Positions 8,396 to 41,694 of a DNA stretch of 64,000 nucleotides are shown piece by piece. The position numbers were made by a program, and so were the translations under genes. The stretch's first letter is position 1; every line of letters begins with the position of its first letter. The notes under the pieces are model-generated. The model ran no database searches, had not been told where the DNA came from, and was given only the letters and a program-made list of their open reading frames with translations. Source of the DNA: Styela clava. Taxonomy: Eukaryota. The stretch spans positions 19,778,001 to 19,842,000 of the forward strand of contig NC_135254.1 of the NCBI RefSeq assembly GCF_964204865.1, read 5' to 3'.

Positions 8396-8401
8396 TTTAT
8401 T
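8396..8401 (-). terminator. Candidate polyadenylation signal AATAAA of the exon-array gene
   Basis: tttatt on the plus strand, ~40 nt downstream of the TGA at 8439-8441. Confidence 0.45.
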
Positions 8402-8438: not shown

Positions 8439-8477
8439 TCACGGAGGTGGAGGTTCCTCTAATTGTGAATATTTCAT
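8439..8477 (-). CDS. Candidate terminal coding exon of the exon-array gene (MKYSQLEEPPPP*)
   Basis: Strong acceptor tttctctactttcatttacag. Read in phase 0, like all upstream exons, it gives 12 codons plus TGA, followed by AATAAA. Confidence 0.55.
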   Translation of the reverse strand: MKYSQLEEPPPP

Positions 8478-11400
8478 CTGTAAATGAAAGTAGAGAAATG
8501 GTTTCAACGCTCGTTACCAAATAAATTTCATTAAGCAGCAATTTGTAATCAATATAACTCGAAAACAGAAATGGATATTTATAGATTAATAAATAAAATA
8601 TTTAAATTGAGTATTATTGCGATTAACAAAAAACAATATGCATATATATGTTATATGCTTTACATGCATTGTATGCTTCCTAAAACCCTCATGTATTCTT
8701 TTATTAATGAAGCGAAATTTGAATTTTGGTATCTGATGTTTTCAAATGTCAACTTTCTCCCTGAACTAATCAGTGTCATAAATATTCGCAAATCAGCATA
8801 AAGTTATTGGGCCGACGCCGCATGGTAACGAATACCATTCAAACAAATGTAAAAAAAATATGATGACAGTACATTTGCACCTGTAAATATTTGAGCCCAC
8901 GGGTCATTTAAACCTAAGGTCATTTTCACCCGAGATATATCTGTATAGGGCAGCATATGTACAATTGTCCCTGGTTACAAATGTGCGTGGGTGCGAATGT
9001 CTTGCTAATATATAATAGCTCAATAGTCGTATATCATATATATATATAGATACCTTGTCTTCGCCGTCCAAAACAGAATTTACATTTTCGGACAGAAGAC
9101 TAAGAATATCATCATCTCCAAATGAAACATCTTCTTCTTCCTATTAAATTCAGACTTTTTATTCAACACAAAACAAACTAAAATTTAATAAATGACATTT
9201 CATACTGCCTACTTAGATTATTTTCTAAATCTCCGTTTATGCATCTTTTAGATGTACGATAAAAAATTACAAACCACTGAAGCCAAATCAATTTTGTCCG
9301 GAAGGGAAATGAGAACATCTTTCGAAAGAAGTATTTCATCTAAAAGCTGTGGTAAGAAAATTAAACGTTTGTTAACAAGAAGAATCAAACGCTGTAACAA
9401 TTCCAGTTGACGGTTTATATATAAAGTTATTAAGCAAACGTCTCATTGTTGTAAATGTCATTCAAACAGATGTAAAATAAACTTAGTGACAAGACATGTG
9501 CACTTGTGGACGCATGCGGCCCGCAGTTTGGACCACCCTGACATAGATTGTTTATATTTATATGATCATCAAGGTTTCATTGAACAAAATGAGGCATTCA
9601 CTACTTTTGGGGAGCAAATAAATAAAGTTTGTCTCTAAATCTTTTGAAGTTATTCCTTTCCACGAGCAATTTAAACTCAACGTCATTTTCAACTACAATA
9701 ACTCAATAGTCGTAAATTTTATAGTTACCTTGTCTCCACCTTCCAAAGCAGAATTGGCCTTTTCTGGAATAAGACTAAGAATATCACAGTCTTCAAATAA
9801 AACATCTTCTTCGTCCTGTCAAATTTAAATATTGTAGTTTACAAAAAACAAGAACCTAGCTATACTATAATTCAACAGACATTTTGAAACATGATTCTTG
9901 TACAGTACTGTATATATTTAACTGTAGAATTGCGTTTGTTGAAGAAAAAATAAGTGAAAGAAACCCAATCAAAACTTCGAGTTCCACGTTTCCCAATAGT
10001 CCCACGTGTCTCATTTGTCTCACGTATCTAAATTAATATTTATACGCTATACAAGTAAATTTATATAATCAAACCTTGTCCCCAATGTCCAATGCATTTT
10101 CTGACAGATGACTAGGGATATCATCGTTTTCAAATGTTGTACGAACCATTCGGAAAGCGTCGCATTCAGCATTTTTTACTGGTGTTTGATATTTGTTTGA
10201 TGTGGTACCATCCTGGAAATAAAGATGCCTCTCGAAATAACTATATGGCATTTTCTTTAAATATATATAGATGATGAATTAATGAACAAGCTAAAAAACA
10301 AACCTTGTCTTCACAATCCAAGGCAGCCTTGACCTTTTCTGACAGAAGGCTAAGTACATCATCGTCTTCAGATGTAACATCCTCTTTGTCCTGGTAAATT
10401 TATATTTTGTAGTTTACACAAAACAAAGACCTAACTATAATTTAACTGACTTTTGAAACGAAGAATTAATCCAGTCTAAATGAATTCTAACACTGTATAT
10501 ATTTTCTTGGAAAGTTGCCGTTGGTGAGGAAAAAATAGGTGAAATGAACCCAATGTATAGGCTAAACGGTGTAAATTTCGTTACGACTCGCTCTACGTAT
10601 CCCACCTAACATTCTATATTACAGGTTAATTTACTTATACAGACCTTGTCTTCACTGTCCGATGCAGAATTGACATTTTCTGACAGAAGACTAAGGACAT
10701 CATCGTCTTCGAATGTAACATCCTCTTTGTCCTGTTCAATTCATATTTCGTAGTTTACACAAAACATGGACCTAACTATTTTATAATTCAACCGACTTTC
10801 GTAAGACGAGGAATTATTAATCTTGCTTATCTATACTCTTAGCTACTCTAAGAATTTGTAAATAATTAGATGAAGAATTTTGCTTGTTAAAGAAAAAATA
10901 GGTAGAATGGACTCAATATGCAAATAATTACGTAGATCAATTAACTAACTAATATTGTTTCATTCAACGAAATAATCCCACTCATGTATTTATTTATTGT
11001 AGTTCTTATATTTGGCAGGATGAAAAATTTACAAACCTTTGGAAGCAAATCAATATTGTCGAGAAAGGAAATGACAACAGCTTTGAAAAAAAGTATTTCA
11101 TCTGAGATCTGTGGCAGAAAAATTTTGTTAGTAAGGTGAATAGAACGATTGACAAGTCCAGTTGACGTTTTTGGAAACTTTATATATAAATTATATTGAT
11201 TGCTACCTCATTAAATTCAAATTTTTCATATGTTTTCACGATCATACAAAACAGGCTTTTATTCTATTGCCTCGTTTTTTTCATTTTATAACGAATCATT
11301 TAATGTCGATAATTACTCGGTACGATATTCTTGACCTCGAAAGCAAATATTTACGAAAAGCAGTGCATTCCTTTGTTGCAGAAAAATGCAAATTCCACTT

Positions 11401-14400
11401 GTTTTGTTAAATATTATTACGCTTTGGGAATATAGAACAACATTAGATATGGATAGATAACATTCCGGAAATAGATGCGTGAATCGTACATGGTGCATCA
11501 CTTGTACCACGTTTCCAAATTAATTATTATATATTACAGGTAAATTTATTTAAACAAACCTTGTCTCCACCGCCCAATGCAGAATTTACATTTTCGGACA
11601 GGAGACTAGGAATACATTCGTTTTCAAACGTTGAACGAACTTTTCTGATGCCGTCACATTCAGCAATATTGACTGGAGTTTGGTATTTCTTAGATGTGCC
11701 ATCCTGAAAATATAGATGCGTCTCGAAATACCTACTTCGTAATTTTTTCAAATATAAAAAATGAATTCAATTTGATTCTATTTAATATTGAGTTAATATT
11801 AAACAATCTTTGTCTTCGCCGTTCAAAGCAAAATTTGCCTTTTCCGACAGAAGACTGAGGACATAATCGTCTTCCAATGTAACGTCCTCTCCGTCCTGTT
11901 AAATTCATCTTTCGAAGTTTACACAAAACAAAGACCTAACTAAAATTTGCCCTACTGTTTGAGACGAGTGAATAATCCTATCTTTTCAAATTTAAGTACT
12001 GTATATATATAGCTGAAGAAGTGCGTTTGGTGGAAAAAAAATAGGTGAAAAAACCCAATAAAGAATGTCTCAAAAATTTCGTGTACGAATTGTTCCACGT
12101 GTCCGAAAAGTCCAACGTGTCTCATTTGTTCCACGTATCCCACTTAACATTCATATATTACAGGTTAATTTAATCAAACAAACCTTGTTTTTACCGACCA
12201 ATGCAGAATTGACCTTTTCTGACAGAAGACTAAGGACATCATCGTCTTCAAATGTAACATCTTCTTCGTCCTGTTTAATTCATATTTTGTAGTTTACACA
12301 AAACAAAGACCTAACTATAATTTAACGAACTTTTTAAAGACGAACAATTAATCCAGTCTATTCGAATTCTTGCGTTGGGTAAAAAAAAAAAGTGAAAGCA
12401 ACCCAATGGAGGGTGTCTCGAAAATTTCGAGTACGACTTGTTTCACGTGTCTCAGTAGTACATGGTGCATCCCTTGTACCACGTTTCAAAATCAATATTT
12501 AAATATTACAGGTTAATTTAGTTAAACAAACCTTGTTTTCACTGTCCAATGCAGAATTCACATTTTCTGACAGAAGACCAAGGATATCATCGTCTTCAAA
12601 GGTAACATCCTCTTCGTCCTGTTAAATTAATATTTTGTAGTTCACACAAATCAAAGACCTAACAAAAATTGCCCTACTTTATTAGACGAGTGAATAATCT
12701 TCTCTTTTCAAATTTTTGCAATGTATATACTTAAATGGAGAATTGCGTTTGGTGAAAAAAAAAATGAAAGGAACCCAATGTAGGGTGTCTCGAAAATTTC
12801 GAGTAGCCTACGACTTGTTCCACGTGTCCCAGCAGTACATGGTGCATCACTTGTACCACGTTTCAAATTAATATTTATATATTACAGGTTAATTTACCCA
12901 AAAACTTTCTCTTCGTCCTGTTAAATTTATTATATTTTGTAGTTTACACAAAACAAACACCCAACTATACTATAATTTGAAAGACATTTCAAGACGAAGA
13001 ATAAATCCAGTCTATTTATACTCCTGTACTGTATATATATATATTTAGCTGGAGAATTGCGTTTGACAAAGAATAATGAAGTAAAAGGAATCCAATGTAG
13101 AGGGTATCTAGAAAATATCGTGTCCCACTAGTTCCATGTGCCCCAATAGTCCCACGTGTCTCACTTGTCCCACGCATCCCACTCAGTATTTAAATATTAC
13201 AATTTAATTTACTTAAACAAACCTTGTCTTTAACGTCCAATGCAGAATTGCTATTTTCTGACAGGAGACTAAGAATGTCATCGTTTCCAAATGAAGCATC
13301 TCCGCCGTTCTGTTAAATTTTGTTATTTAACTCAAAACACAGACCTAACTGTTTTAAAATTTAATTTGTAAGACGAGGGATTAATCTTGCCGAACTACAT
13401 TCTTAGCAACACTTCGAATTTGTAAATAATTAGCTGAAGAATTCCACTTGTTGAAGAAAAAAAAAGTAGAATGAACTCAATATGCAAATAATTATGTAGA
13501 TCAATTAACAAACCACTAATATTTCATTCAACGAAATAATCCACTCCTGTGTTTATTTATTGTAGTTCATATATTTGTCAAGATGAAAAATTCACAAACC
13601 TTTGGAAGCAAATCAATATTGTCGAGAATAGAAATGACAACAGCCTCAAAAATTAGCATTTCATCTGAGATCTGTGGCAGAAAAATTAAACTTTTGTTAG
13701 CAAGGTGAATAAAACGATATAACAAATACAGTTGAAGCTTCTGGAAACTTTATATATGAATTTTAATGATTGCCAACTCGTTAAATTTGAATTTCCCATT
13801 CATTTTCACGATCATACAAAACAGGTTTTTATTCTATTGAGTTGTTTCTTCATTTTAAATCGAATGATTTAATATCGATGCTCGGTTATCGATGCTCAGT
13901 TACTCGGTTTAATATTCTTGACATCAAAAACAAATATTTATGGAAGACAGTGCATTCTTTTGCTTCCAGGAGATTGACAATTGTACTCGTTTTGTTAGAT
14001 ATTAAACAGTTTGGAAAAGTATAAGGCAACATAGAATATGGATAGATATTCTTGAGCATCATTCACCACTAACTGGTTTGAAGTTAGGTATATAAAATTG
14101 TACTTTAAAAATGTTGTACGAACTTTTCTGATGACGTCGCATTCAGCATTTTTCACTGAAGTTTGATATTTCTTTGATGCGGTGTCATCCTGGAAATAGA
14201 TGCGTAAATAGTACATGGTGCATTACTTGTACCACGTTTCCAAATAAATATTTATATATTTAAGGGTAATTTACTCAAACAAACCTTGTCTCCACCGCCC
14301 AATGCAGAATTTACATTTTCAGACAGGAGACTAGGAAAATATTCATTTTCAAATGTCGAAGGAACTTTTTTGATGCCGACACATTCAGCAATATTCACTG

Positions 14401-17400
14401 GAATTTGGTATTTCTTTAATGTGATGCCATCCTGAAAATATAAATGCGTCTTGAAATAACTACTTCGTAATTTCATTCAATATAAGAAATGAATCCAATT
14501 TCATTCTACTTAATATTGAGTTATTAATAAACAAACCTTGTCTTCGCCGTTCAAAGCAGAATTTGCCTTTTCCGACAGAAGACTGAGTATATCATCGTCT
14601 TCAAATGTAACATCCTCTTCGTCCTGTTAAATTCATATTTTGAAGTTCACACAAAACAAAGACCTAACTAAAATTTGCCCTACTTTTTGAGACAATTGAA
14701 TAATCCTATATTTTCAAATTCTTGCACTGTATATATTTAGCTAGAGAAGTGGGTTTGGCGGAAAAAAAAATAAGTGAAAGAAACCCAATGTAGGATGTCT
14801 CGAAAATTCCATGTACGTCTTGTTCCACGTGTCCCAGCAGTACATGGTGCATTACTTGTACCACGTTTCCAAATCAATGTTTAAATATCACAGGTCAATT
14901 TACTTAAACAAACCTTGTCTTCACCGTCCAATGCAGAATTTACAGTTTCGGACAGGAGACTAGGAAAATATTCTTTTCCAAATGTTGAAGGAACTTTTCT
15001 GATGGCGTCACATTCAGCAATATTTACTGGAGTTTGGTATTTCTTTGATGTGATGCCATCCTGAAAAAATAGATGCGTCTCGAAATAACTATTACGTAAC
15101 TTCTTCAAATATATAAAAAATGAATAAATGAACAAGCTGGTAAACAAACCATTTCTTCAATATCCAAAGCACAATTGGCCTTTTCTGACAGAAGATGAAG
15201 GACATCATCGTCTTCAAATGTAACATCCTCTTCGTCCTGTTAAATTCATTTTTTATAGTTTACACAGAACAAACACCCAACTATACTATAATTTGAACGA
15301 CTTTTTTGTGACGAAAAATAATCCAGTCTATTTATACTTTTCTACTGTATATATCTAGCTGGAGAATTGTGTTTGGCAAAGAAAAATGAAGTAAAAGGAA
15401 TCCAAAGTGGGGTGTCTCGAAAATGTCGTGTCCCACTAGTTCCATGTTTCCCAATAGTCTTACGTGTCTCACTTGTCGCACGCATCCCACTCAGTATCCA
15501 TATATTACAGTTTAATTTACTTGAACAAACCTTGTATTCAACGTCCAAAGCATAATTTACATTTCCTGACAGGAGACTAGGGATATATTCGCTTTCAAAT
15601 GTTGAACGAACTTTTCTGATGGCGTCACATTCAGCAATATTCAATGGAGTTTGGTATTTCTTTGATGTTATGCCATCCTTAAAATATACATGCGTCTTGA
15701 AATAACTTTTTCGTAATTTGTTGAAATATAAGAAAATAATTCAATTTCATTTTACTTAATATTGAGTTAATGATAAACAAACCTTGTCTTCGCCGCTTGA
15801 AGCAGAATTTGCCTTTTCCGATAGAAGACCAAGGATATCATCGTCTTCAAAGGTAACATCCTCGTCCTCCTGTTTAATTAATATTTTGTAGTTCACACAA
15901 ATCAAAGACCTAACAAAAATTGCCCTACTTTATTAGACGAGTAAATAATCTTCTCTTTTCAAATTTTTGCAATGTATATACTTAGTTGGAGAATTGCGTT
16001 TGGTGAAAAAAAATGAAAGGAACCCAATGTAGGGTGTCTCGAAAATTTCGAGTAGCCTACGACTTGTTCCACGTGTCTCAGCAGTACATGGTGCATCACT
16101 TGTACCGCGTTTCAAATTAATATTTATATATTACAGGTTAATTTACCCAAAAACTTCCTCTTCGTCCCGTTAAATTTATATTTTGTAGTTTACACAAAAC
16201 AAACACCCAACTATACTATAATTTGAAAGACATTTCAAGACGAAGAATAAATCCAGTCTATTTATACTCCTGTACTGTATATATATATATTTAGCTGGAA
16301 TTTGCGTTTGACAAAGAAAAATGAAGTAAAAGGAATCCAATGTAGAGGGTATCTAGAAAATATCGTGTCCCACTAGTTCCATGTGCCCCAATAGTCCCAC
16401 GTGTCTCACTTGTCCCACGCATCCCACTCAGTATTTAAATATTACAATTTAATTTACTTAAACAAACCTTGTCTTTAACGTCCAATGCAGAATTGCTATT
16501 TTCTGACAGGAGACTAAGAATATCATCGTTTTCAAATGAAGCATCTCCGCCGTTCTGTTAAATTTTGTTATTTAACTCAAAACACAGACCTAACTGTTTT
16601 AAAATTTAATTTGTAAGACGAGGGATTAATCTTGCCTAACTACATTCTTAGCAACACTTCGAATTTGTAAATAATTAGCTGAAGAATTTCACTTGTTAAA
16701 GAAAAAAAAAGTAGAATGAACTCAATATGCAAATAATTATGTAGATCAATTAACAAACCACTAATATTTCATTCAACGAAATAATCCACTCCTGTGTTTA
16801 TTTATTGTAGTTCTTATATTTGTCAAGATAAAAAATTCACAAACCTTTGGAAGCAAATCAATATTGTCGAGAATAGAAATGACAACAGCCTCAAAAATTA
16901 GCATTTCATCTGAGATCTGTGGCAGAAAAATTAAACTTTTGTTAGCAAGGTGAATAAAACGATATATCAAATACAGTTGAAGCTTCTGGAAACTTTATAT
17001 ATGAATTTTAATGATTGCCAACTCGTTAAATTTGATGTTCCCATTCATTTTCACGATCATACAAAACAGGTTTTTATTCTATTGAGTTGTTTCTTCATTT
17101 TAAATCGAATGATTTAATATCGATGCTCGGTTATCGATGCTCAGTTACTCGGTTTAATATTCTTGACATCAAAAACAAATATTTATGGAAGACAGTGCAT
17201 TCTTTTGCTTCCAGGAGATTGACAATTGTACTCGTTTTGTTAGATATTAAACAGTTTGGAAAAATATAAGGCAACATAGAATATGGATAGATATTCTTGA
17301 GCATCATTCACCACTAACTGGTTTGAAGTTAGGTATATAAAAATGTACTTTAAAAATGTTGTACGAACTTTTCTGATGACGTCGCATTCAGCATTTTTCA

Positions 17401-20400
17401 CTGAAGTTTGGTATTTCTTTGATGCGGTGTCATCCTGGAAATAGATGCGTAAATAGTACATGGTGCATTACTTGTACCACGTTTCCAAATAAATATTTAT
17501 ATATCGAAGGGTAATTTACTCAAACAAACCTTGTCTCCACCGCCCAATGCAGAACTTACATTTTCAGACAGGAGACTAGGAAAATATTCATTTTCAAATG
17601 TCGAAGGAACTTTTTTGATGCCGACACATTCAGCAATATTCACTGGAATTTGGTATTTCTTTAATGTGATGCCATCCTGAAAATATAAATGCGTCTTGAA
17701 ATAACTACTTCGTAATTTCATTCAATATAAGAAATGAATCCAATTTCATTCTACTTAATATTGAGTTATTAATAAACAAACCTTGTCTTCGCCGTTCAAA
17801 GCAGAATTTGCCTTTTCCGACAGAAGACTGAGTATATCATCGTCTTCAAATGTAACATCCTCTTCGTCCTGTTAAATTCATATTTTGAAGTTTACACAAA
17901 ACAAAGACCTAACTAAAATTTGCCCTACTTTTTGAGACAATTGAATAATCCTATATTTTTAAATTCTTGCACTGTATATATTTAGCTAGAGAAGTGGGTT
18001 TGGCGGAAAAATAAATAAGTGAAAGAAACCCAATGTAGGATGTCTTGAAAATTTCATGTACGTCTTGTTCCACGTGTCCCAGCAGTACATGGTGCATTAC
18101 TTGTACCACGTTTCCAAATCAATGTTTAAATATCACAGGTCAATTTACTTAAACAAACCTTGTCTTCACCGTCCAATGCAGAATTTACAGTTTCTGACAG
18201 GAGACTAGGGATATATTCTTTTCCAAATGTTGAAGGAACTTTTCTGATGGCGTCACATTCAGCAATATTTACTGGAGTTTGGTATTTCTTTGATGTGATG
18301 CCATCCTGAAAAAATAGATGCGTCTCGAAATAACTATTACGTAACTTCATCAAATATATAAAAAATGAATAAATGAACAAACTGGTAAACAAACCATGTC
18401 TTCAATATCCAAAGCACAATTGGCCTTTTCTGACAGAAGATGAAGGACATCATCGTCTTCAAATGTAACATCCTCTTCGTCCTGTTAAATTCATTTTTTA
18501 TAGTTTACACAGAACAAACACCCAACTATACTATAATTTGAACGACTTTTTTGTGACGAAAAATTAATCCAGTCTATTTATACTTTTCTACTGTATATAT
18601 CTAGCTGGAGAATTGTGTTTGGCAAAGAAAAATGAAGTAAAAGGAAAACAATGTGGGGTGTCTCGAAAATGTCGTGTCCCACTAGTTCCATGTTTCCCAA
18701 TAGTCTTACGTGTCTCACTTGTCGCACGCATCCCACTCAGTATCCATATATTACAGTTTAATTTACTTGAACAAACCTTGTATTCAACGTCCAAAGCATA
18801 ATTTACATTTCCTGACAGGAGACTAGGGATATATTCGCTTTTAAATGTTGAACGAACTTTTCTGATGGCGTCACATTCAGCAATATGCACTGGAGTTTGG
18901 TATTTCTTTGATGTTCTGCCATCCTTAAAATATACATGCGTCTCGAAATAACTCTTTCGTAATTTGTTCAAATATAAGAAAAGAATTCAATTTCATTTTA
19001 CTTAATATTGAGTTAATAATAAACAAACCTTGTCTTCGCCGCTTGAAGCAGCATTTGCCTTTTCCGACTGAAGACGAAGGATATCATCGTCTTCAAATGT
19101 AACATCCTCTTCGTCCTGTTAAATTAATATTTTGTAGTTTACACAAAACAAAGGTCTAACAAAAATTGCCCTACTTTTTGAGACGTGAATAATCCTATCT
19201 TTTTAAATTCTTGCACTGTATATATTTAGCTGGAGAAATGCGTTTGGTGAAAAAATAGGTGAAAGGAGCCCAATGTAAGGTGTCTCGAAAATTTCGTGTA
19301 CGACTTGTTCCACGTGTCCAAAAAGTCCAACGTGTCTCATTTGTCCCACGTATCCCACTTAACATTCATATATTACAGGTTAATTTACTCAAACAAACCT
19401 TGTCTTCACCGTCCAATGCAGAATTAGCCTTCTCTGACAGAAGACTAAGGATATCATCGTCTTCGAATGTAACATCTTCTTCGTCCTAACAAATTCATAT
19501 TTTGTAGTTTACACAAAACAAGAACCTAACTATACTATATTATAACGAACTTTTCAAAGACGAAAAATTAATCCAGTCTATTTGAATTCGTGTACTGTTT
19601 ATATTTAGCTGGAGAATTGCGTTTGGTAAAAAAAATCAAGTGAAAGGAATCCAATGTAGGTTGTCTCGAAGGTTTTTTGTACGACTTATTGCACGTGTCC
19701 AAGTAGTACATAGTACATCACTTATAGTATACCACATTTCCAAATTAATATTTATATATTACCGGTTAATTTACTTAAACAAACCTTGTCTTCACCGCCC
19801 AAAGCAGAATTTGACAGGAGATTAGGGATATATTCGTTTTCAAACGTTGAACGAACTTTTCCGATGGCGTCACATTCAGCAATATTCACTGGAGTTTGAT
19901 ATTTCTTTGATGTGATGCCGTACTGAAAAAAATAGATGCGTCTCGAAATACCTACTTCGTAATTTCTTCAAATATATAAAAATTGGATTAATGAACAATC
20001 TGGTAAACAAACCATGTCTTCAATATCCAAAGCAGAATTGCTCTTTGCTGATAGAAGACTAAGGACATCATCGTCTTCAAATGTAACATCCTCTTCGTCC
20101 TGTTAAATTTATATTTTGTGTTTAACACAAAACGAACACCCAACTATACTATAATTTAAACGACTTTTTGAGATGAAGGATTAATCCAGTCTATTTATAC
20201 TCTGATACTTTATATATAAGCTGAAGAACTGTGTTTGGCAAATAAAAATGAAGTGAAAGGAATCCAATGTGGGGTGTCTCGAAAATGTCGTGTCCCACTA
20301 GTTTCATGTTTCCCAATAGCCCCACGTGTCTCACTTGTCCCACGCATTCCACTCAGTATTTAAAGATTAGTTTAATTTACATTAGACAAACCTTGTCTTC

Positions 20401-23400: not shown

Positions 23401-26400
23401 TTTACTTAAACAAACCTTGTCTTCACCGTCCAATGCAGAATTTACATTTTCGGACAGGAGACTAGGGATATATTCTTTTCCAAATGTTGAAGAAACTTTT
23501 CTGATGCCGTCACATTCAGCAATATTTACTGGAGTTTCGTATTTCTTTGATGTGGTGCCATCCTGAAAAAATAGATGCGTCACAAAATAATTACTTCGTA
23601 ATTTCATTAAATATATAAAAAATGAATTATTGCACAAGCTGGTAAACAAACCATATCTTCAATATCCAAAGCAGAATTCGCCTTTTCTGACAGAGGACTA
23701 AGGACATCATCGTCTTCAAATGTAACATCATCTTCGTCCTGTCAAATTTATATTTTGTAGTTTACACAAAACAAACACCCAGCTATACTATAATTTAAAC
23801 GACTTTTTGAGACGAAAAATTCATCCAGTCCATTTATGCTCTTGTACAGTTTATATTTAGCTGGAGATTTGTGTTTGTCAAAAAAAATGAAGTAAAAGGA
23901 ATCCAATGTGGGGTGTCTCGAAAATGTCGTGTCCCACTAGTTTCATGTATCCCAATAGTCCCACGTGCCTCACTTGGCCCACGCACCTCACTCAGTATTT
24001 AAATATTACAGTTTCATTTACTTAAATAAACAAACCTTGTCTTTACCGCCCAAAGCAGAATTTTCTGACACGAGACTTAGAATATCATCGTTTTCAAATG
24101 AAGCATCTCCGCCGTTCTGTTAAATTTTAATTTTTATTTAACTCAAAACACAGACCTAACTATTCTAAAATTTAACAGACCTTTGTAAGACAGGGAATCT
24201 TGCCTAACTACATTCTTAGCTACACTTCGAATTTGTAAATAATTAGATGAAGAATTTCACTTGTTAAAAAAAAAAGTAGAATGAGTTTAATATGCAAATA
24301 ATTATGTAGATTAATTAACTAATCACTAATATTTCATTCAACGAAATAATCCCACTCCTGTGTTTATTTATTGTAGTTATTATATTTGTCAAGATGAAAA
24401 ATTTACAAACCTTTGGGAGCAAATCAATATTGTCGAGAAAGGAAATGACAACAGCCTTGAAAAAGAGCATTTCATCTGAGGTCTGTTGCAGGAAAATTAA
24501 ACTTTTGTTAGCAAGGTGAATAAAACGATATAACAATTTTAGTTGAAGTTTCTGGATACCTTATATATAAATTTAAATGATTGCTAACTCATTAAATTTA
24601 AATTTTCAATTTATTTTCACGATCATACAAAACAGGCTTTTATTCTATTGAGTTGTTTCTTCATTTTAAATCGAATGATTTAACATCGATGCTTACCTGG
24701 TTTAATATTCTTGACCTCAAAAACAAATATTTATGAAAGACAGTGCATTCTTTTGTTTACAGGAGAATGACAATTGTACTCGTTTTGTTAGATTTAAACG
24801 GTTTGGGAATAGATAAGGTAACATAGAATATGAATAGATAATCTTGAGTATTATTCACCACTAACTGGTTTGAAATTAGGTATATAAAATTGTACTTATA
24901 AAAATGTTGTACGAACTTTTCTGATGACGTCGCATTCAGCATTTTTCACTGAAGTTTGGTATTTCTTTGATGCGGTGTCATCCTGGAAATAGATGCGTAA
25001 ATAGTACATGGTGCATTACTTGTACCACGTTTCCAAATAAATATTTATATATTGAAGGGTAATTTACTCAAACAAACCTTGTCTCCACCGCCCAATGCAG
25101 AATTTACATTTTCAGACAGGAGACTAGGAAAATATTCATTTTCAAATGTCGAAGGAACTTTTTTGATGCCGACACATTCAGCAATATTCACTGGAATTTG
25201 GTATTTCTTTAATGTGATGCCATCCTGAAAATATAAATGTGTCTTGAAATAACTACTTCGTAATTTCATTCAATATAAGAAAAGAATCCAATTTCATTCT
25301 ACTCAATATTGAGTTATTAACAAACAAACCTTGTCTTCGCCGTTCAAAGCAGAATTTGCCTTTTCCGACAGAAGACTGAGTATATCATCGTCTTCAAATG
25401 TAACATCCTCTTCGTCCTGTTAAATTCATATTTTGAAGTTCACACAAAACAAAGACCTAACTAAAATTTGCCCTACTTTTTGAGACAATTGAATAATCCT
25501 ATATTTTTAAATTCTTGCACTGTATATATTTAGCTAGAGAAGTGGGTTTGGCGGAAAAAAAAATAAGTGAAAGAAACCCAATGTAGGATGTCTTGAAAAT
25601 TTCATGTACGTCTTGTTCCACGTGTCCCAGCAGTACATGGTGCATTACTTGTACCACGTTTCCAAATCAATGTTTAAATATTACAGGTAAATTTACTTAA
25701 ACAAACCTTGTCTTCACCGTCCAATGCAGAATTTACATTTTCTGACAGGAGACTAGGGATATATTCTTTTCCAAATGTTGAAGGAACTTTTCTGATGGCG
25801 TCACATTCAGCAATATGCACTGGAGTTTGGTATTTCTTTGATGTTCTGCCATCCTTAAAATATACATGCGTCTTGAAATTACTCTTTCGTAATTTGTTCA
25901 AATATAAGAAAAGAATTCAATTTCATTTTACTTAATATTGAGTTAATAATAAACAAACCTTGTCTTCGCCGCTTGAAGCAGCATTTGCCTTTTCCGACAG
26001 AAGACGAAGAATATCATCGTCTTCAAATGTAACATCCTCTTCGTCCTGTTAAATTAATATTTTGTAGTTTACACAAAACAAAGGCCTAACAAAAATTGCC
26101 CTACTTTTTGAGACGAGTGAATAATCCTATCTTTTTTAAATTCTTGCACTGTATATATTTAGCTGAAGAAATGCCTTTGGTGAAAAAAAATAGGTGAAAG
26201 GAACCCAATGTAGGGTGTCTCGAAAATTTCGTGTACGACTCGTTCCACGTGTCCAAAAAGTCCAACGTGTCTCATTTGTCCCACGTATCCCACTTAACAT
26301 TAATATATTACAAGTTAATCTACTCAAACAAACCTTGTCTTCACCGTCCAATGCAGAATTAGCCTTCTCTGACAGAAGACTAAGGATATCATCGTCTTCA

Positions 26401-29400
26401 AATGTAACATCTTCTTCGTTCTAACAAATTCATATTTTGTAGTTTACACAAAACAAGAACATAACTATACTATATTATAACGAAATTTTCAAAGACGAAA
26501 AATTAATCCAGTCTATTTGAATTCTTGTACTGTTTATATTTAGCTGGAGAATTGCGTTTGATAAAAAAAATCAAGTGAAAGGAACCCAATGTAGGTTGTC
26601 TCGAAGGTTTTGTGTACGACTTGTTCAGTACATGGTACATCACTTATACCACGTTTCCAAATCAATATTTACATATTACAGGTTAATTTACTTAAACAAA
26701 CCTTGTCTTCACCGACCAGTGCAAAATTTACATTTTTTGATAGGAGGCTAGAGATATATTCGTTTTCAAATGTTGAACGAACTTTTCTTATGGCGTCACA
26801 TTCAGCAATATTCACTGGAGTTTGATATTTCTTTGATGTGATGCCATCCTGAAAATATAGATGCGTCTCGAAATAACTACTTCGTAATTCCTCAAATAAA
26901 GAAAATATATTAATAAACAAGCTGATAAACAAACCATGTCTTCAATATCTAAAGCAGAATTGACCTTTTCTGACAGAAGACTGAGGACATCATCGTCTTC
27001 AAATGTAACATCCTCTTCGTCCTAACAAATTCATATTTTGTAGTTTACCAAAACAAGGACCTAAATATACTATAATTCAACCATCTTTTAAAAGACTAAA
27101 AATTAATCCAGTTTCTTTGAATTCTTGTACTGTTTATATTTAACCGGAGAACTGTGTTTGGTGAAAAAAAAAATAAGTGAAAGGAACCCAATGTAGGGTG
27201 TCTCGGAAATTTCGTGTACAACGTGTCCCACGTGTCCCAGTAGTACATAGCGCATCACTTGTACCACGTATCCACATTAATATTTATATATTACAGGTTA
27301 CTTTACTTAAACAAACCTTGTCTTCACCGCCCAAAGCAGAATTCACATTTTTTGACAGGAGACTAGGGATATATTCGTTTTCAAATGTTGAACGAACTTT
27401 TCTGATGGCGTCACATTTAGCAATATTCACTGGAGTTTGGTATTTCATTGATGTGATGCCATTCTGAAAAAATATAGATGCGTCTCGAAATAACTACTTC
27501 GTAATTTCTTCAAATATAAATGAAATGAATTCAATTTCATTCTACTTAATATTGAGTTATTAGTAAACAAACCTTGTCTTCGCCGTTCAAACCAGAGTTT
27601 GCCTTTTCCGACAGAAGACTGAGGATATCATCGTTTTCAAATGTAACATCCTCTTCGTCCTGTTAAATTCATTTTTCGTAGTTTACACAAAACAAAGACC
27701 TAAGTAAAATTTGCCCTAATTTTTGAGACAATTGAATAATCCCTTATTTTTAAATTCTTGCACTGTATATATTTAGCTGGCGAAGTGGGTTTGGCAAAAA
27801 AAATATGTGAAAGGAGCCCAATGTGGGGCGTCTCGAAAATTTCCTGTACGTGTTGTTCCACGTGTCCGAATAGTCCGAAGTGTCTCATTTGTCCCATGTA
27901 TCCCACTTAACATTCATATATTACAGGTTAATTTACTCAAACAAACCTTGTCTTCACCGTCCAATGCAGAATTGATCTTTTGTGAGAGTAGACTAAGGAT
28001 ATCATCGTTTCCAAATGAAACATCTTCTTCGTCCTGTTAAATTCATATTTTGTAGTTTACATGAAACAAGGACCTAACTATGCTATAATTTAACCGACGT
28101 TAGTAAGACGAGGGATTAATCCAGTCTATTTGAATTCTTGTTATGTGTATATTTAGCTGATGAATTGCGTTTGGTAAATGAAAGGAACGGAACCCTATGT
28201 AGGTTGTCTCGAAAATTTCGTATCCCACTTGTTCCACGTTTCCTAATAGTCCAACGTGTCTCAATTATCACACGTATCCATAATAATTTTTACATATTAC
28301 AGGTTAATTTAAACAAACCTTGTCTTCACCGCACAATGCAGAATTCACATTTTCTGATAATAAACTAGAGATATATTCGCTTTCAAATGTTGAACGAACT
28401 TTTCTGATAGCGTCGCATTCAACATTTTTCACTGGAGTTAGGTATTTATTTGATGTGGTGCCATCCTGAAAATTTTGATGCGTCTCGGAATAACTATATC
28501 TTAATTTCTTCAAATATAGCAAATGAATTAATAAACATGCTGACAAACAAACCTTGTCTCCACAATCTAAAGCAGAGTTGTTCTTTTCTGACAGAAGACT
28601 AAGGACATCATCGTCATCAAATGTAACATCATCTTCGTCCTGTTAAACTCATATTTTGTAGTTTACACAAAACACAAACCTAACTATATTTTACCCGAAA
28701 AAATCAAAGACGAAAAATTAATCCAGTCTATTTGAATTCTTGTACTTTTTATATCTAGTTGGACTCAAACAAACCTCGTCTTCACCGTCCAATGCAGAAT
28801 TGACATTTTCTGACGGAAGACTAAGGACATCATCGTTTTCGAATGTTGTACGAACTTTTCTGATGACGTCGCATTCAACATTTTTCACTGGAGTTATGTA
28901 TTTGTTTGATGTGGTGCCATCCTGAAAATTTTAATGCGTCTCGGAATAACTATATCGTAATTTCTTCAAATATAGAAAATGAGTTAATAAACATGCTGAT
29001 AAACAAACCTTGTCTTCATAATCCAAAGAAGAATTGCCCTTTTCTGACAGAAGACTAGGGATATCATCGTCTTCAAATGAAACATCGTCGTCGTACTGAT
29101 AAATTTAGACTTTTTATTCCATACAAAACAAAGACCTAATTATATCATAATTTGAGATTTCGATACATGAGATTAATTTTGTCTATTAAACGTCTTGTAC
29201 ATATTTGACTTGAGAATTGCGTTTATTTCTTAAAAATAAATTAAATAAACCTAATGAACAGATAATTACATAGAACAATGAAATTGCGTCTAATCATTTA
29301 TTCAACAAAATTCTTGATTTTTGAAATAGACGTATGATTTTTATTACAGATCCTATATTATATCAAAATAATAATTTACATACCTGTGGAGGCAAATCAA

Positions 29401-32400
29401 TTTTGGCAGGAAAAGAAATGAGAACATCCTTGGGGGAGAGTATTTCATCAGAAAGCTGAGGAAGAATAAACTATTGTTAAAATCAAATAGAGCAATTGCA
29501 ATTTCCGAAACAATTTATGAGTGTTACCCCTGGTAATTCCGCAGTGTCGATGAAGTTTTGCAGTTACACAAAACAGGTCTCTAATGCAATTTATAGGTTT
29601 ACTGGTTTCCAGCAGAATGAAAATTCGACTCGTTTCGTTAAATATTACAAGAATAAATAATATTATTGGTATACTATTTGTAGGGCAACATTAGATATTG
29701 ATATATATATATATATATACAAGACTACATATTTTACACAAGTAACTTGTTGAAAATAGTCTACAAAAATGTGTTTAAGCGAAAAATGTTGTACGAACTT
29801 TTTTGATAGCGCCGCATTCATCATTTTTCACTGAAGTTTGGGATTTGTTGAATGTGGTGCCAATCTGAAAATAAATGCGTCTCAAAATTTTTCTTTAAAG
29901 TTTAGCAAATTAAAAAAAAAATAGAAAAATGCAATTTCATTCTATTCAATTAATCAGCATTCATTAACGAACATAAATATTGAAGAGATTTGATTCATGG
30001 GGATGAAAATGTGTATCTTTTATACTCCATCATCAAGCAAATGGAAAAAGAGTTACCTTCTACAAAATTGAAATTAGTGGAAATTTTAACACCAAAATCA
30101 TCAAATATTCGGAACCAACAGTTATTAAAAACAAGGCCTGCAATTGCCTCAATTGTGGGTACAATTTGCGCGTTTTGCTCGGTAAAATAGAGCCGCAGAC
30201 TGAAAATATGATAGAAGGTAAATTTCAGCATGATAATTGATGGATCGATAATTGGACACGTTAGTTGGACCTATGGATCGTTTCAATATGATGTTGTTGT
30301 TGTTCTTGTTCTTTGACACGCTATGAATAAGTGGACAAATTGCTTTGAAATTTTCAGTGGTTAAAGATTGATTTTTTTGCCAGAGCTATTACTTCAATTT
30401 TTTATTATTGAACACGAAGTGGACCTGTGGATCGTTTTACTTTTTCTTTGGACACCTAGTGGAAAACCTAAAAAGTCGATTTTATGCTAGCACTCTTCTT
30501 CTTGTTTTTAATCACGTGCTTATCGAACGTCGGCGGTGTGTAACAAAGTTCTTGCTTTCCCAACGGGGAATGGCGTACAGCGCCGTAGGTAAGAACTGCT
30601 TCTCCCTGATTAACGTGTCCCTATATTTTAGCATTGCTCTCTTGTTCCTAATATATTTCTGTTCTGAGGTTATAATTGGTTGTCTGTGACTTGTCTATTT
30701 CATATTCTAGCAAAATAGTGATCGCTAACATTGGAAATTCGATTTTTGAAATTTGGGTCGTGATATGTTTATAAAACTCAGATTTGGGCCCCGCTCAAAA
30801 AGTTCAAGAACCCCTGATCTAAAATAAAAAAGGTAAGAAAGAAAACTATAACTCACATTGTTATTTGGAACTACACTCCTGATTTTATCATCAACCATGC
30901 AGCCAGGTAAGTTCTGTGCAAAGAAATAAAAAATAGTTCAATATAAACTTGTGATTCACCAATGTTAGCAGAGCATATTCGTGATATAAAACTCACCGGA
31001 TATGAGATCGCACGAGGGAGCTCAACTATCGATTTTTGTATCTGAAAATATTTATTTCAAATTAATCAATTGAAATAAAATGTGTGAATAATAGAATAAA
31101 ATCAATCAATTACAATTTGGTCTGCCAAAGCATCGTTATCCAGTGAAGGTATCGTATCAACATTGTTGAAGGAACTTTTGACATAAGACACAGTAGTTTG
31201 CTGTTAAAAATATATATTGGTGAACATAAGTTATTTTCTAAAACAAAATGCATTCCGAGTTTATATTATAACTCTGCAAAGTAATAACCACCACATTTGT
31301 ATAAAATATACATAAGTGCATTTTCAAATATGGAAGCTGTCAATCAAATTGAGATATTTTTTTTGAAATTCGCTCACCGTTCTATATCGTTTTTCCCTTT
31401 TTGGAATGCGGCAACAGCAGCACAGCTGAAATATAAATGACTTGTTTCAATGGCAAGAAAACTTCTGCCTTGTGTTAGTAGTAATGGAACTATAAAACGG
31501 AGCGACGCAACAAAGCATATAATAGATATTATTTTGTAGCCAAGTGTTAATTAAGTATAATAATGGTATCTTACATAAAATACGATAAACTAATTTAATA
31601 TAAAAACCAATAATTTGAAATTAGTATTATATTTACCTTTTTGATATGGCCTGTGAACGATCGGAATATACTCTCATTCTATGAAATAAAATAAAAATAT
31701 TTAGTTGAGAATAAATAAAAGGACGTAGCTTGATAATAATTCTTTCTTCTACGTAGGAAGAAGTATGGAAGTAAACATTGGTTTGTCAAGATCTAGTTTG
31801 TAATCGACCTAAGTTCCCCGCTTGATTAACAATTCCAAGACGAATGAGTCATAAGTGCAACAAGGCATTCTCAAACAAGTATCGTCATATGCTATATTTC
31901 AAATTCTATTGGATTGCGCCAATCTCAATGAATACCGCTAAAAATTTACGTCAACATGCTACTTTAATCCAAATTTACATAATATGTAAACAACAAAACT
32001 CTAACGAGAATATCGGTCGGACCGAAGACTTATCGATCGAAACTGCGGTTTCGATTCATGACTCTATGGTGACACCGCGTGCCACACCACTAATTAATTA
32101 ATAACTCGCTTATTATACGACATAATTCATCCAAAATCGATAGGCTTCTGGTCCGAGATATGATGAATGCACATGCGAAATTTGGAGCAGATTCAACCAC
32201 GCTTTCATGAGATACTGCGTGCATCTAACAGACATACAGACAAATACCTATCAACATACTTACAGATCTAAAGATCGACTCGTATATTTCCTTTCCATGT
32301 GGGTACTAGTATATATAAAGCTTTCTCCGTTGCGAATAGGAAAAATACCTTATTGAAAACAATATGCCTTGCATAGGCTACTCTATTTTACGGAAGAAAT

Positions 32401-32594
32401 CTAAAAAAAAATTAAAATTTCCCCATTGTCATCTCAAATACTGTCCGACTACCAACACTACCCCTCAAAGTTTGTTAGAAGCGTGGTCTAGCACAGAGAA
32501 TGAAAAGTCCGCAATCACCCCTAACCAGATTTAAAAAAGACCCGATATTTCTTTATTACATTACCTTTGGATCACGTCCGTTATGAGAAATCAT
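8439..32594 (-). CDS. Uncharacterised giant acidic repeat protein built from ~69 phase-0 exons (~2,150 aa if all are included)
   Basis: ATG at 32594, six unique exons, 62 intact repeated exons, terminal exon 8477-8439. Exons have canonical AG/GT ends and lengths divisible by 3. No stop was found in phase 0 in the copies translated, whereas the alternative phases hit stops in the exons tested (29799-29864, 30997-31041). Confidence 0.72.
9054..29095 (-). CDS. Class A repeated exons, 87 nt / 29 aa, consensus DEEDVTFEDDDILSLLSEKVNSALDGEDK (variant NGGDASFENDDILSLLSENSNSALDVKDK), 32 copies
   Basis: Copies at 9054-9140, 9729-9815, 10304-10390, 10645-10731, 11809-11895 (donor lost), 12184-12270, 12532-12618, 13223-13309, 14537-14623, 15150-15236, 15783-15869, 16468-16554, 17782-17868, 18395-18481, 19029-19115, 19399-19485, 20013-20099, 20392-20478, 21681-21767, 22057-22143, 22671-22757, 23041-23127, 23652-23738, 24036-24116 (81 nt), 25330-25416, 25959-26045, 26334-26420, 26935-27021, 27573-27659, 27947-28033, 28553-28639, 29009-29095. 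Typical ends ttaacag / AAG|gtttgt. Confidence 0.8.
9275..29455 (-). CDS. Class C repeated exons, 72 nt / 24 aa, e.g. ISDEMLIFEAVVISILDNIDLLPK, 7 copies
   Basis: Copies at 9275-9346, 11037-11108, 13600-13671, 16845-16916, 20781-20852, 24411-24482 and 29384-29455, each with a cag acceptor and GT donor. The two terminal copies are the most diverged (LLDEILLSKDVLISLPDKIDLASV; LSDEILSPKDVLISFPAKIDLPPQ). Confidence 0.72.
10075..28921 (-). CDS. Class B repeated exons, 147 nt / 49 aa, consensus DGITSKKYQTPVNIAECDAIRKVRSTFENEYIPSLLSENVNSALGGEDK, 18 copies
   Basis: Copies at 10075-10212 (138 nt), 11560-11703 (144), 14285-14431, 14914-15060, 15531-15677, 17530-17676, 18159-18305, 18777-18923, 19785-19922 (138), 21429-21575, 22420-22566, 23416-23562, 25078-25224, 25707-25853, 26702-26848, 27317-27463, 28319-28465, 28775-28921. 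Typical ends ttttcag / AAG|gtttgt. Most appear inside the minus-strand ORFs of the track. Confidence 0.8.
14124..29864 (-). CDS. Class E repeated exons, 66 nt / 22 aa, e.g. DDTASKKYQTSVKNAECDVIRK, 5 copies
   Basis: Copies at 14124-14189, 17369-17434, 21265-21330, 24917-24982 and 29799-29864 (IGTTFNKSQTSVKNDECGAIKK). Acceptor is cag; the donor is inferred at AAA|gttcgt because it keeps phase 0 and read-through in the 29.8-kb copy meets a stop after six codons. Confidence 0.62.
30857..30913 (-). CDS. Unique coding exon 6 of the exon-array gene (NLPGCMVDDKIRSVVPNNN)
   Basis: tttctttgcacag acceptor, gtgagt donor, 57 nt, phase 0/0. Confidence 0.7.
30997..31041 (-). CDS. Unique coding exon 5 (IQKSIVELPRAISYP)
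   Basis: ttttcag acceptor, CCG|gtgagt donor, 45 nt; only phase 0 is open. Confidence 0.72.
31114..31200 (-). CDS. Unique coding exon 4 (QTTVSYVKSSFNNVDTIPSLDNDALADQI)
   Basis: tttttaacag acceptor, gtaatt donor, 87 nt, phase 0/0. Confidence 0.68.
31378..31425 (-). CDS. Unique coding exon 3 (LCCCCRIPKREKRYRT)
   Basis: atatttcag acceptor, ACG|gtgagc donor, 48 nt, phase 0/0. Confidence 0.72.
31637..31678 (-). CDS. Unique coding exon 2 (NESIFRSFTGHIKK)
   Basis: ttttattttatttcatag acceptor, AAG|gtaaat donor, 42 nt. Confidence 0.7.
31780..32285. mobile_element. Probable non-autonomous Helitron/Helentron-associated-like repeat in an intron
   Basis: Contains aaatttggagcagattc, a cagacatacagaca microsatellite-like block and related ends (cgatcgaa / agatcgac). 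A segment of similar character lies at ~30235-30600. Classification is inference. Confidence 0.3.
32565..32594 (-). CDS. Candidate first coding segment (MISHNGRDPK) within exon 32639-32565
   Basis: AAG|gtaatg donor; the ATG is in phase with downstream exons and preceded by an in-frame TGA. A further upstream donor (gtgagt at 32884-32879) suggests a 5' non-coding exon. Confidence 0.55.
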
Positions 32595-32950
32595 TCTTCA
32601 ATTGAAAGACATTACTCCGAAAGAAATTTTGACTCATTTCTAATCAACAAAATATGTCCGAGCAATCGTCTGCCAAACATATATACCACACGAGAGCTAC
32701 GTACCGACCAATTTTTATTTAGTACAGGGTATCAGCCCCCCAAAATATAATTTCGAACCATTTTATATCGTAAGCTACCCTTGTGGTTTAAAGATACGAA
32801 CTAAAAACAATTCATTTAATTTTTTGGTTCAACGTTTTGTGACGTAACAGTAGAAAAAGCGATTGTGAACTGCAAAGTACTCACAAGCTTGTGAAGAGCA
32901 AACAATCAGAGTCAAGCGAGAATGTCTCTAATGAGATAGTTGCGAGTGGG

Positions 32951-40428: not shown

Positions 40429-41694
40429 CAGGGTCGGCCAACATTTTTGGCCGACGGGCCACATTTAGTTTACTAAATGGTAAATTAACATGGAATATAT
40501 GGTAAATATTTTTCTAGTTTTGCTACACTGACTAAAAGTTAAGGACAAAAAAGTTAAAAACAAACAAAACCCTCGCATCAAACTTTCTCAATAATAAGAA
40601 CAATGAAAAAACGAAGATACTGTAAAGTCAACAAAGGTCTTTCTACGCGTAGATATTTTGGTGTGAAGTTTGAACAAGTTTTCAATATTTGCTGAAATGG
40701 ACGATGTAGCAATGCGAAGCCAATTTTTATATAACTGTCAGAAATTAGTGATCTCACTTGCTTATACAAGTAAGTGTTGACGAATAATGAGGTCAATAAA
40801 ACTGCCATTCTGTGAATCCTCTGAAATTCTTTCTTTAGAGACGTATTTTCTGTAAAATTGAGTAATGGCAAGTCTTTAAACCTCTCCTTTAAATTAGACT
40901 GTTAATTGTACGTTATTTAAGCGCCAAAGCAATCCAAAGTTGTCAACTCATCAATATTTTGCTTAATTGCCAAAACATCAAAGATTTTATGCATGTACAT
41001 ACCAGGCCTAAACCTACAGCATTGGCAATTATCATTTATGACCCCAGCATAGAGGGAGAAGGGGGCAGTCACCCCGGGCAGCACGTTATAGAGGGCAGCA
41101 GAACCTAGCCTAGTTTTTCACAGCTATTTCCGGTCCAATTTTTGATTAGCAGCAATTACACTATAAGTAAACAGAATAATCATCGAATTATTGGATCCGC
41201 ACTGAAATTTCCGAACATAATCAAAAACTTTGCATATTCTTTATTACTCATAATTGGCTATTCAATTGCTAGTTGCGAACGATCTTTCTCAAAGTTGAAA
41301 CAGATAAAAACATATTTAATGTCTTCGATGTCAAACCAGGGCCTGTTAGGTTTATCTTTGATCAGCATCGAAAAGGCATTCCTGACTAACGAGGTGAAAA
41401 AACTTGTTGTTCAGACATTTGTAGCGATTGGACATGTTTTTGCTAATAAATGTGTTCGATCTTGTAAATATGAGTTTGTTGCTTAGGTTGATGATTTATT
41501 TAATAAAACAAACGTTTTCATTTATTCTCATGCATAACAACATCTATAATTTGTTCATTCCACGAAATATTTTTTAAGTTAGATATATGGGGCAGCATTA
41601 TCCGAAACTCGCCCCGGGCAGCAGGAGAGTTCGGCACGCTCCTGCTCCTAGGCGGGCCACACGTGGCCCGCGGGCCACGGGTTTGACGACCCTG
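40429..41694 (-). mobile_element. Charlie/Buster-type hAT non-autonomous element carrying a nested family-X element
   Basis: Ends cagggtcggccaac and gtttgacgaccctg. Perfect TSD gtttaggg at 40421-40428 and 41695-41702. Minus-strand remnant AVLLTSLFVNTYLYKQ resembles the GTF2IRD2/SPIN-type transposase C-terminus. Confidence 0.88.
41046..41644 (+). mobile_element. hAT family-X element nested in the Charlie element; hAT dimerisation domain remnant
   Basis: Same gccccgggcagca subterminal motifs and right end (ggcacgctcctg) as the 32951 and 34614 copies. ORF 41142-41486 contains FPNI..SIASCERSFSKLKQIKTYLMSSMSNQGLLGLSLISIEK. The left end is degraded. Confidence 0.82.

What the first reader, a model, noticed from the sequence alone, without database searches (positions are those of the whole stretch)
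8439..32885. Hidden giant gene: ~60 tandemly amplified, interchangeable phase-0 exons encoding an acidic repeat protein
Seen: what looks like a 21-kb satellite is a series of 64 exon+intron units on the minus strand in four classes (32 x 87 nt, 18 x 147 nt, 7 x 72 nt, 5 x 66 nt, plus 2 x 12-nt remnants). 62 keep AG and GT ends. They are bracketed by six unique phase-0 exons with an ATG and a terminal exon with stop and AATAAA. Knowledge: symmetric phase-0 exons can be skipped or duplicated without frameshift, as in the titin PEVK region, where many small exons tune the length of a disordered segment. Inference: a lineage-specific, length-tunable protein of up to ~2,150 aa whose size and charge could be set by combinatorial splicing and by copy-number change. 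I recognise no family for it.
Basis: partly seen in the sequence, partly recalled or inferred. Interest (0 to 1): 0.88.

Follow-up and report, generated by a model that had tools for sequence, protein, structure and literature searches.

The report
Giant acidic repeat gene, sea squirt
The apparent 21-kb satellite is a real gene of the sea squirt Styela clava. NCBI already lists it as an uncharacterised 2,100-residue protein. It was built by repeated tandem copying of small frame-neutral exons that encode a very acidic protein with no known relatives.

Summary
On the minus strand, 9.0-29.9 kb holds 62 AG/GT-bounded, stop-free, phase-0 exon copies: 32 of about 87 nt, 18 of about 147 nt, 7 of 72 nt and 5 of 66 nt. 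There are also two 12-nt remnants.

The gene is not hidden. A profile of the 147-nt exon peptides found XP_077969262.1, "uncharacterized protein LOC120344762 [Styela clava]", 2,100 aa. It maps exactly onto the window as 66 coding exons, all phase 0 and all GT-AG.

Selection keeps the frame:
- 0 stops against about 9 expected.
- 61 non-3n indels in introns and none in exons (P about 1e-10).
- The only exon indels are 9, 6 and 6 nt.

Residue-level constraint is weak (omega about 0.4-0.8).

The protein is 231 kDa with pI 4.1 and net charge -277. It has no signal peptide or membrane span, and its head is basic and Cys-rich. No Pfam, NCBIfam, PDB or sequence relative turned up, so it is an orphan.

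The closest analogues in architecture are titin PEVK and NBPF/Olduvai. Interest is moderate.

The parts
36401..36469 (-). First coding exon of the public model (ATG, 23 codons, donor GTATTT). Short upstream out-of-frame ATGs precede it.
   Evidence: Exact mapping of P0001; sequence read
30857..31678 (-). Five unique phase-0 exons (31637-31678, 31378-31425, 31114-31200, 30997-31041, 30857-30913) with near-consensus donors (GTAAAT, GTGAGC, GTAATT, GTGAGT, GTGAGT). They include the LCCCC/basic stretch.
9054..29864 (-). Array of 59 coding repeat exons used in the public model: 30 A (87 or 81 nt), 17 B (147, 144 or 138 nt), 5 b (66 nt) and 7 C (72 nt). It is organised in five super-repeats, each opening with b-C. 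Introns are 86-135 nt, 254-305 nt, or longer.
22420..22757 (-). Two intact exon copies (A 22671-22757, B 22420-22566) with AG/GT ends and an open frame. The public model skips them, leaving an 897-nt intron.
11809..11895 (-). An A-type exon copy whose donor GT has become GA. It is not used in the public model and is a decaying copy.
16155..16166 (-). 12-nt remnant of an A exon (internal 75-nt deletion) with its acceptor mutated to GG. Its twin at 12906-12917 keeps AG and GT.
8439..8477 (-). Terminal coding exon (12 codons) with its TGA stop. An AATAAA follows at 8396-8401.
12523..19393 (-). The youngest block duplication: 12523-16151 against 15774-19393, 96.6% identical over 3.6 kb. Older blocks are 80-89% identical.
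15409..15491 (-). Example of the G-rich tract of three 18-nt units found 40-140 nt downstream of the donor in the introns of about 290 nt. It belongs to a genome-wide 9/18-nt minisatellite family.

Best explanation
This is a genuine protein-coding gene of the sea squirt Styela clava (RefSeq LOC120344762). It was assembled by nested tandem duplication of small exon+intron units. Shown: 66 coding exons spread over 28 kb, all phase 0 and all GT-AG, together encode 2,100 aa. The repeat part consists of a 29-residue acidic module (A), a 49-residue module (B) and a 24-residue hydrophobic-acidic module (C). The last 81 nt of B are 80% identical to the tail of A. A fourth class, b, is a truncated B that uses an internal in-frame GT as its donor. 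These units were copied first as A/AB units of about 620 nt and then as blocks of 3.2-3.9 kb; the youngest pair of blocks is 96.6% identical. Selection has removed stops and frame-breaking indels from the exons while tolerating many amino-acid changes. Inferred: the product is an intracellular, largely disordered or loosely helical polyanion (net charge about -277). It carries some 50 copies of an acidic-cluster plus amphipathic-helix motif, and a short basic, cysteine-rich head (with an LCCCC stretch beside basic residues) that may anchor or target it, possibly through palmitoylation or as a nuclear signal. I think it most likely acts as a long multivalent scaffold, spacer or cation buffer whose length and valency depend on exon number. 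Because every exon is frame-neutral, unequal crossing-over between blocks, and possibly exon skipping, can change length without destroying the protein. The stated confidence is for 'real translated gene built by exon-block amplification'. The specific role of the protein deserves no more than about 0.3.
For: A profile of 15 B-exon peptides (A1) searched against 1.84 billion proteins hit one 2,100-aa protein with 52 matching stretches. NCBI names it XP_077969262.1, uncharacterized protein LOC120344762 [Styela clava]. That protein maps 100% onto the window as 66 phase-0 GT-AG exons. A tree-aware count gives 301 exon substitutions and 0 nonsense changes against about 9 expected; the class P values are 0.011, 0.020 and 0.48, with a product of about 1e-4. 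In five paralogous block alignments, introns carry 78 indel events, 61 of them not multiples of 3. Exons (31.5% of aligned bases) carry 3, all multiples of 3 (binomial P = 9e-11). Exon columns have no gaps and higher identity than flanking introns (0.83-0.88 against 0.55-0.70). Parsimony changes per site in exons are about half those in gap-free intron columns. For A exons, NG86 dN/dS is 0.38 in the predicted frame against 1.2 and 0.8 in the shifted frames. Exon GC is 39.5% against 30.3% for introns, and there are 0 stops in 1,972 codons in frame 0 against 53 and 203 in the other frames. AlphaFold2 on the B module gives one long low-confidence helix (pLDDT 55).
Against: The RefSeq entry is a computed model whose supporting evidence I could not see. 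Residue-level constraint is weak: tree-aware omega is 0.7-0.8 and not individually significant (p about 0.15). For B exons a shifted frame gives a lower dN/dS than the predicted frame. Block-pair substitution divergence differs only modestly between exons and introns (8.1% against 10.4%). Of the 65 donors, 55 are GTTTGT, GTTCGT or GTCTGT, which lack the usual purine at +3. The copies share ancestry, so the P values overstate independence. The proposed function rests on composition and motifs only.
Confidence: 0.8

Rival explanations
1. The array is a young, non-functional tandem repeat. Its open frame persists through recency and sequence homogenisation, and an automatic predictor strung the copies into a gene. 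It is not translated, or is only a non-coding RNA.
For: There is no expression evidence. Omega is near 0.7-0.8 by the tree-aware count. The introns themselves are fairly conserved between copies (73-89% majority identity). The donors are non-consensus. No homologue exists anywhere.
Against: Sixty-one frame-breaking indels fall in introns and none in exons (P about 1e-10). Zero nonsense changes are seen against about 9 expected. The AG/GT ends are kept in 61 of 62 full-length copies. Older blocks are only 80-89% identical, which leaves enough time for decay. Copies that did lose a splice site are visibly decaying. The public model also joins a small exon 4.7 kb upstream; I take that as a sign of transcript support, but it is my inference.
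Confidence: 0.1
2. The gene is real, and its main point is isoform diversity: a titin-PEVK-like or Dscam-like system in which many of the 60 interchangeable exons are chosen combinatorially, by tissue or by individual.
For: All exons are phase 0. The repeat-exon donors are uniformly weak-looking while the unique exons have near-consensus donors. B exons keep an in-frame internal GT that b exons use as their donor. The public model skips two intact exons. G-rich tracts sit downstream of the weak donors, where G-runs are known intronic enhancers in vertebrates (my own knowledge).
Against: No read evidence is available. RefSeq lists the protein without an isoform label, and no second model of similar length exists in the 5.8-billion-protein collection. 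The skipped pair could be a mapping artefact, because neighbouring A exons begin with the same bases. The G-rich tract is the least conserved part of the intron and belongs to a dispersed minisatellite, so it need not be a splicing signal.
Confidence: 0.15
3. The protein is a secreted acidic matrix or mineral-binding protein, like shell or otolith matrix proteins, and the annotated 5' end is wrong.
For: The protein is extremely acidic and repetitive, with one conserved Cys per B module. The first exon is uncertain.
Against: The mean hydropathy of the first 30 residues is -1.1, and the most hydrophobic 19-residue window sits inside a C module and contains acidic residues. There are only 5 N-x-S/T sites in 2,100 aa.
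Confidence: 0.05

Closest known systems
Titin PEVK region (vertebrate TTN)
   Same: Both have many small exons, each encoding one roughly 28-residue low-complexity module. Both have whole blocks of exons duplicated or triplicated inside the gene. In titin the length of a flexible segment is set by exon number; human PEVK has 113 annotated exons and a block triplication (PMC6469411). That PEVK exons are differentially spliced is from my own knowledge and from the abstracts listed.
   Different: There is no sequence relation. P+E+V+K+A makes up about 33% here, against the threshold of 0.54 or more used to define PEVK exons in PMC6469411. The array is the whole gene, not a segment flanked by Ig/Fn3 domains. 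It is far more acidic. Splicing diversity is unproven.
NBPF genes / Olduvai (DUF1220) domain arrays in primates
   Same: Both are lineage-restricted proteins built by recent tandem amplification of multi-exon higher-order units, with near-identical blocks prone to copy-number change (my own knowledge).
   Different: No Pfam match to that family was found. Units here hold 7-16 exons of four classes rather than exon doublets in triplets. This is a single locus in the genome, not a dispersed gene family.
Treacle (TCOF1) and Nopp140-type acidic repeat proteins
   Same: Both have a repeated acidic, CK2-site-rich module with one repeat per exon, and are intracellular and largely disordered (my own knowledge). 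The protein here has 75 [ST]xx[DE] sites.
   Different: No sequence or Pfam match was found. The alternating basic blocks are absent. Copy number here is far higher. Nucleolar targeting was not tested.
XP_077969262.1 / LOC120344762 (RefSeq model of this very locus)
   Same: It is identical to the window at all 66 exons.
   Different: It is an unnamed computed model. No paper in the searchable library mentions it, and its exon architecture and evolution have not been described.

Membership tests
Titin PEVK-type exon array | Exons rich in Pro, Glu, Val, Lys (and Ala): ratio of at least about 0.54 per exon (criterion of PMC6469411) | tested here: not met
   P 3.1 + E 10.1 + V 6.7 + K 8.3 + A 5.1 = about 33% of residues; criterion read
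Titin PEVK-type exon array | Many small exons of one phase, each about one repeat module, with block duplications | tested here: met
   66 phase-0 exons, modules of 22-49 residues, 3.2-3.9-kb duplicated blocks
Titin PEVK-type exon array | Documented differential inclusion of the repeat exons | not testable with these tools
NBPF / Olduvai | Match to the Olduvai (DUF1220) domain profile | tested here: not met
   The Pfam scan of P0001 lists only repeat-inflated hits in which no single stretch passes; none is Olduvai
Treacle / Nopp140 acidic repeat proteins | Match to the family profile; alternating acidic Ser-rich and basic blocks | tested here: not met
   No such Pfam hit. The repeat zone has 480 D+E against 194 K+R, with no basic blocks
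EF-hand or other known Ca-binding domain | Profile match to a Ca-binding domain | tested here: not met
   No Pfam, NCBIfam or PDB-sequence match
Real protein-coding gene (general) | Selection against stops and frameshifts in the proposed exons relative to introns | tested here: met
   0 stops against about 9 expected; 0 of 61 non-3n indels fall in exons
Real protein-coding gene (general) | Spliced transcripts or peptides | not testable with these tools

The most novel reading that the evidence does not exclude
The locus is a chordate example of a tunable exon cassette array. Individuals would differ in exon-block copy number, and tissues would choose among about 60 interchangeable frame-neutral exons, including an internal in-frame donor in the 147-nt class. 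That would give a wide range of lengths and charges from an orphan gene, with the weak GTTTGT donors and the intronic G-rich minisatellite tracts acting as the control points.
Probability: 0.12. Interest if true: 0.7.

Novelty: new member of a known kind. Interest (0 to 1): 0.36.

Why it matters
The case shows cleanly how a very large protein can arise from almost nothing. A few short frame-neutral exons were copied in nested tandem blocks, and selection acted mainly on the reading frame rather than on the residues. The youngest blocks are 96.6% identical and every exon is phase 0. That makes the locus a natural place to study exon-number polymorphism, unequal crossing-over inside a gene and, if it occurs, cassette splicing in a close invertebrate relative of vertebrates. 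For annotation, it explains a stretch that looks like a 21-kb satellite and ties it to an existing RefSeq model. That model has an uncertain first exon and leaves out two intact exons.

Tried and rejected
- **Short transcript-derived proteins:** a search for 50-159-aa proteins sharing words with a B exon found no candidate. This is not evidence of absence.
- **Homologues:**
  - The profile search gave a second hit, P0002 (566 aa, from a metagenome; E 2.6e-14 summed over 10 weak repeats). Profile-profile comparison gives 5% probability, and its Pfam hits are repeat artefacts, so I rejected it.
  - The whole-protein search found only the query itself.
- **Known families:** the Pfam, NCBIfam and PDB hits (RXLR_WY, MMS19_C, DUF7195 and others) have no stretch that passes on its own. 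I rejected them as repeat-inflated.
- **PF27571:** this precomputed Pfam label on P0001 could not be looked up.
- **ESM Atlas:** On one B exon it returned only unnamed or phage clusters, which I took as noise.
- **EF-hand reading:** I checked the acidic loop at exon junctions by eye, and it does not fit.
- **Unique exon as founder:** the unique 87-nt exon (31114-31200) is not the founder of class A at the DNA level (22 of 87 identical).
- **Intronic G-rich tract as alternative exon:** I considered this reading and rejected it. All three frames are open there because of composition, it is the least conserved part of the intron, and it is a dispersed minisatellite.
- **Joined protein:** Exons were searched by reference, and the only joined sequence used was the public protein, by its id.
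Full report
**What is there.** The window is AT-rich eukaryotic DNA with no N. Between about 9 and 30 kb, repeat finders show nested direct repeats with spacings near 350, 620, 1,000 and 3,245 nt. I listed every minus-strand segment that follows AG, stays open in phase 0 and ends before GT. Lengths of 87, 147, 72 and 66 nt stand out. Motif-anchored scans then recover 62 units in four classes:
- Class A: 32 copies of 87 nt. One is 81 nt, and one (11809-11895) has lost its donor.
- Class B: 18 copies of 147 nt, with variants of 144, 138 and 138 nt.
- Class C: 7 copies of 72 nt.
- Class b: 5 copies of 66 nt.

Two 12-nt remnants of class A lie at 16155-16166 and 12906-12917. None of the motifs occurs elsewhere in the window. 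A six-frame search of the whole 377-Mb genome with a B-exon peptide finds matches only inside this locus.

**It is an annotated gene.** I aligned 15 B-exon peptides by reference (A1) and searched the profile against 1.84 billion representative proteins. Two proteins matched. The first, P0001, is 2,100 aa with 52 matching stretches. NCBI calls it XP_077969262.1, "uncharacterized protein LOC120344762 [Styela clava]". This agrees with an earlier agent's note that the genome is Styela clava.

P0001 maps onto the minus strand of the window without a single mismatch, as 66 coding exons:
- Every exon is a multiple of 3 and in phase 0. Every intron is GT-AG.
- Coding sequence is 6,300 nt spread over 28,028 nt.
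- Exon 1 is 36401-36469, followed by a 4.7-kb intron.
- The last exon is 8442-8477, followed by TGA, and then AATAAA at 8401.
I cannot say which first exon is right.
- The public model omits two intact exon copies (22671-22757 and 22420-22566), the donor-less copy and the remnants.

The only joined protein I used is the public one, by its id.

A search for short proteins that might come from transcript assemblies found none. The case therefore rests on the RefSeq model, whose supporting evidence I cannot see, and on selection among the paralogous copies.

Four tests support coding:
- *Stops.* On trees of the copies, parsimony counts 301 substitutions in A, B and C exons and no nonsense change, where about 9 are expected. 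Class P values are 0.011, 0.020 and 0.48.
- *Indels.* In five alignments of paralogous blocks, introns carry 78 indel events, 61 of them not multiples of 3. Exons make up 31.5% of the aligned bases and carry 3 events, of 9, 6 and 6 nt. The chance that none of 61 frame-breaking events falls in exons is 9e-11.
- *Rates.* Exon columns are gap-free and more alike than flanks (0.83-0.88 against 0.55-0.70). Changes per site are about half those of gap-free intron columns.
- *Composition.* Exons are 39.5% GC and introns 30.3%. Frame 0 has no stop in 1,972 codons, while the other frames have 53 and 203.

Three points count against strong constraint:
- Tree-aware omega is 0.7-0.8 and not individually significant.
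- Pooled NG86 gives 0.38 for A but 0.70 for B, where one shifted frame scores lower.
- Block-pair divergence is 8.1% in exons against 10.4% in introns.

The copies share ancestry, so the P values are generous. Even so, the pattern is clear: the frame is protected and the residues much less so. That pattern is what a disordered repeat protein should show.

**How it was built.**
- The exon order in the public model is six unique exons, then five super-repeats that each open with b-C followed by mixtures of A and A-B, then a short tail and the last exon.
- Self-alignment shows a 3.6-kb pair of blocks at 96.6% identity (12523-16151 against 15774-19393). Older pairs are 80-89% identical.
- The last 81 nt of the B consensus are 80% identical to the last 81 nt of A.
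- The b exons match the first 66 nt of B (58 of 66). They stay similar for about 15 nt past the in-frame GT that serves as their donor, and then diverge.
- So B is a specific head joined to an A-type tail, and b looks like a truncated B that uses an internal GT.
- Copies that lost a splice site or most of their body are left out of the model and are decaying. The array evolves by birth and death.

**Introns.**
- Fifty-five of 65 donors are GTTTGT, GTTCGT or GTCTGT, while the unique exons use donors nearer the consensus.
- The introns of about 290 nt carry three 18-nt G-rich units, 40-140 nt downstream of the donor.
- A DNA search of the genome shows that this tract, and only this tract, recurs on many chromosomes as arrays with a 9- or 18-nt unit. 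It is a dispersed minisatellite.
- It may have favoured unequal exchange, or it may act as a G-run splicing enhancer. Both readings are inference.

**The protein.**
- It is 231 kDa, with pI 4.1, 493 acidic against 216 basic residues, no Trp and 1.7% Cys.
- The first 116 residues are basic (pI 9.6) and hold 7 Cys, including four in a row next to basic residues.
- No segment looks like a signal peptide or a membrane span.
- AlphaFold2 on the B module with its 15 paralogues gives one long helix at low confidence (pLDDT 55).
- Pfam, NCBIfam and PDB-sequence searches give only repeat-inflated or insignificant hits. The 5.8-billion-protein search returns only the query. The second profile hit is not a relative.
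- The family is an orphan within what these collections hold. They hold few tunicates.

My best guess at function is an intracellular polyanionic scaffold, spacer or cation buffer with about 50 acidic amphipathic motifs, targeted by its basic Cys-rich head. This is inference from composition, and I give it no more than about 0.3.

**Comparison with known systems.** In architecture the gene works like the PEVK segment of titin: many small one-module exons and block duplications (PMC6469411). It also resembles the exon-block arrays of NBPF genes. It is a member of neither: its composition fails the PEVK criterion and no profile matches. No paper in the searchable library names the locus.

**Verdict.** It is a new member of a known kind, of moderate interest.

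Noticed in passing
window 5057-7227 (+): A decayed hAT-type transposase, split over three or four overlapping ORFs. Pfam matches DUF4371 and the hAT C-terminal dimerisation region. It lies just downstream of the gene's 3' end.
   Followed up: partly
window 41142-41483 (+): A second hAT dimerisation-domain remnant.
   Followed up: partly
L015 (G000:C3:2930000-2938000) and onward to about C3:2971200: A tandem array, with a period of about 3.75 kb and at least 11 units, of full-length signal recognition particle RNA genes (Rfam RF00017, 263-269 bits). Each unit also carries the same 9/18-nt G-rich minisatellite found in this gene's introns.
   Followed up: partly
L013 (G000:C5:21112500-21115000), L017 (G000:C1:18733500-18736000): Long arrays (13-128 copies) of the 9/18-nt unit TGTCCCACT / CGTGTCCCACTTGTCCCA. 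This is a dispersed minisatellite family of this genome.
   Followed up: partly
window 36470-36560 (-): Two short out-of-frame upstream ATG reading frames precede the annotated start codon. The true start and 5' end are unverified.
   Followed up: no
P0001 (database record): The protein collection lists a precomputed Pfam label, PF27571.1, for this protein. It is absent from the Pfam copy available here and could not be identified.
   Followed up: partly
window 48071-48166: A degenerate 15-nt tandem repeat, 6.3 copies, 67% matches.
   Followed up: no
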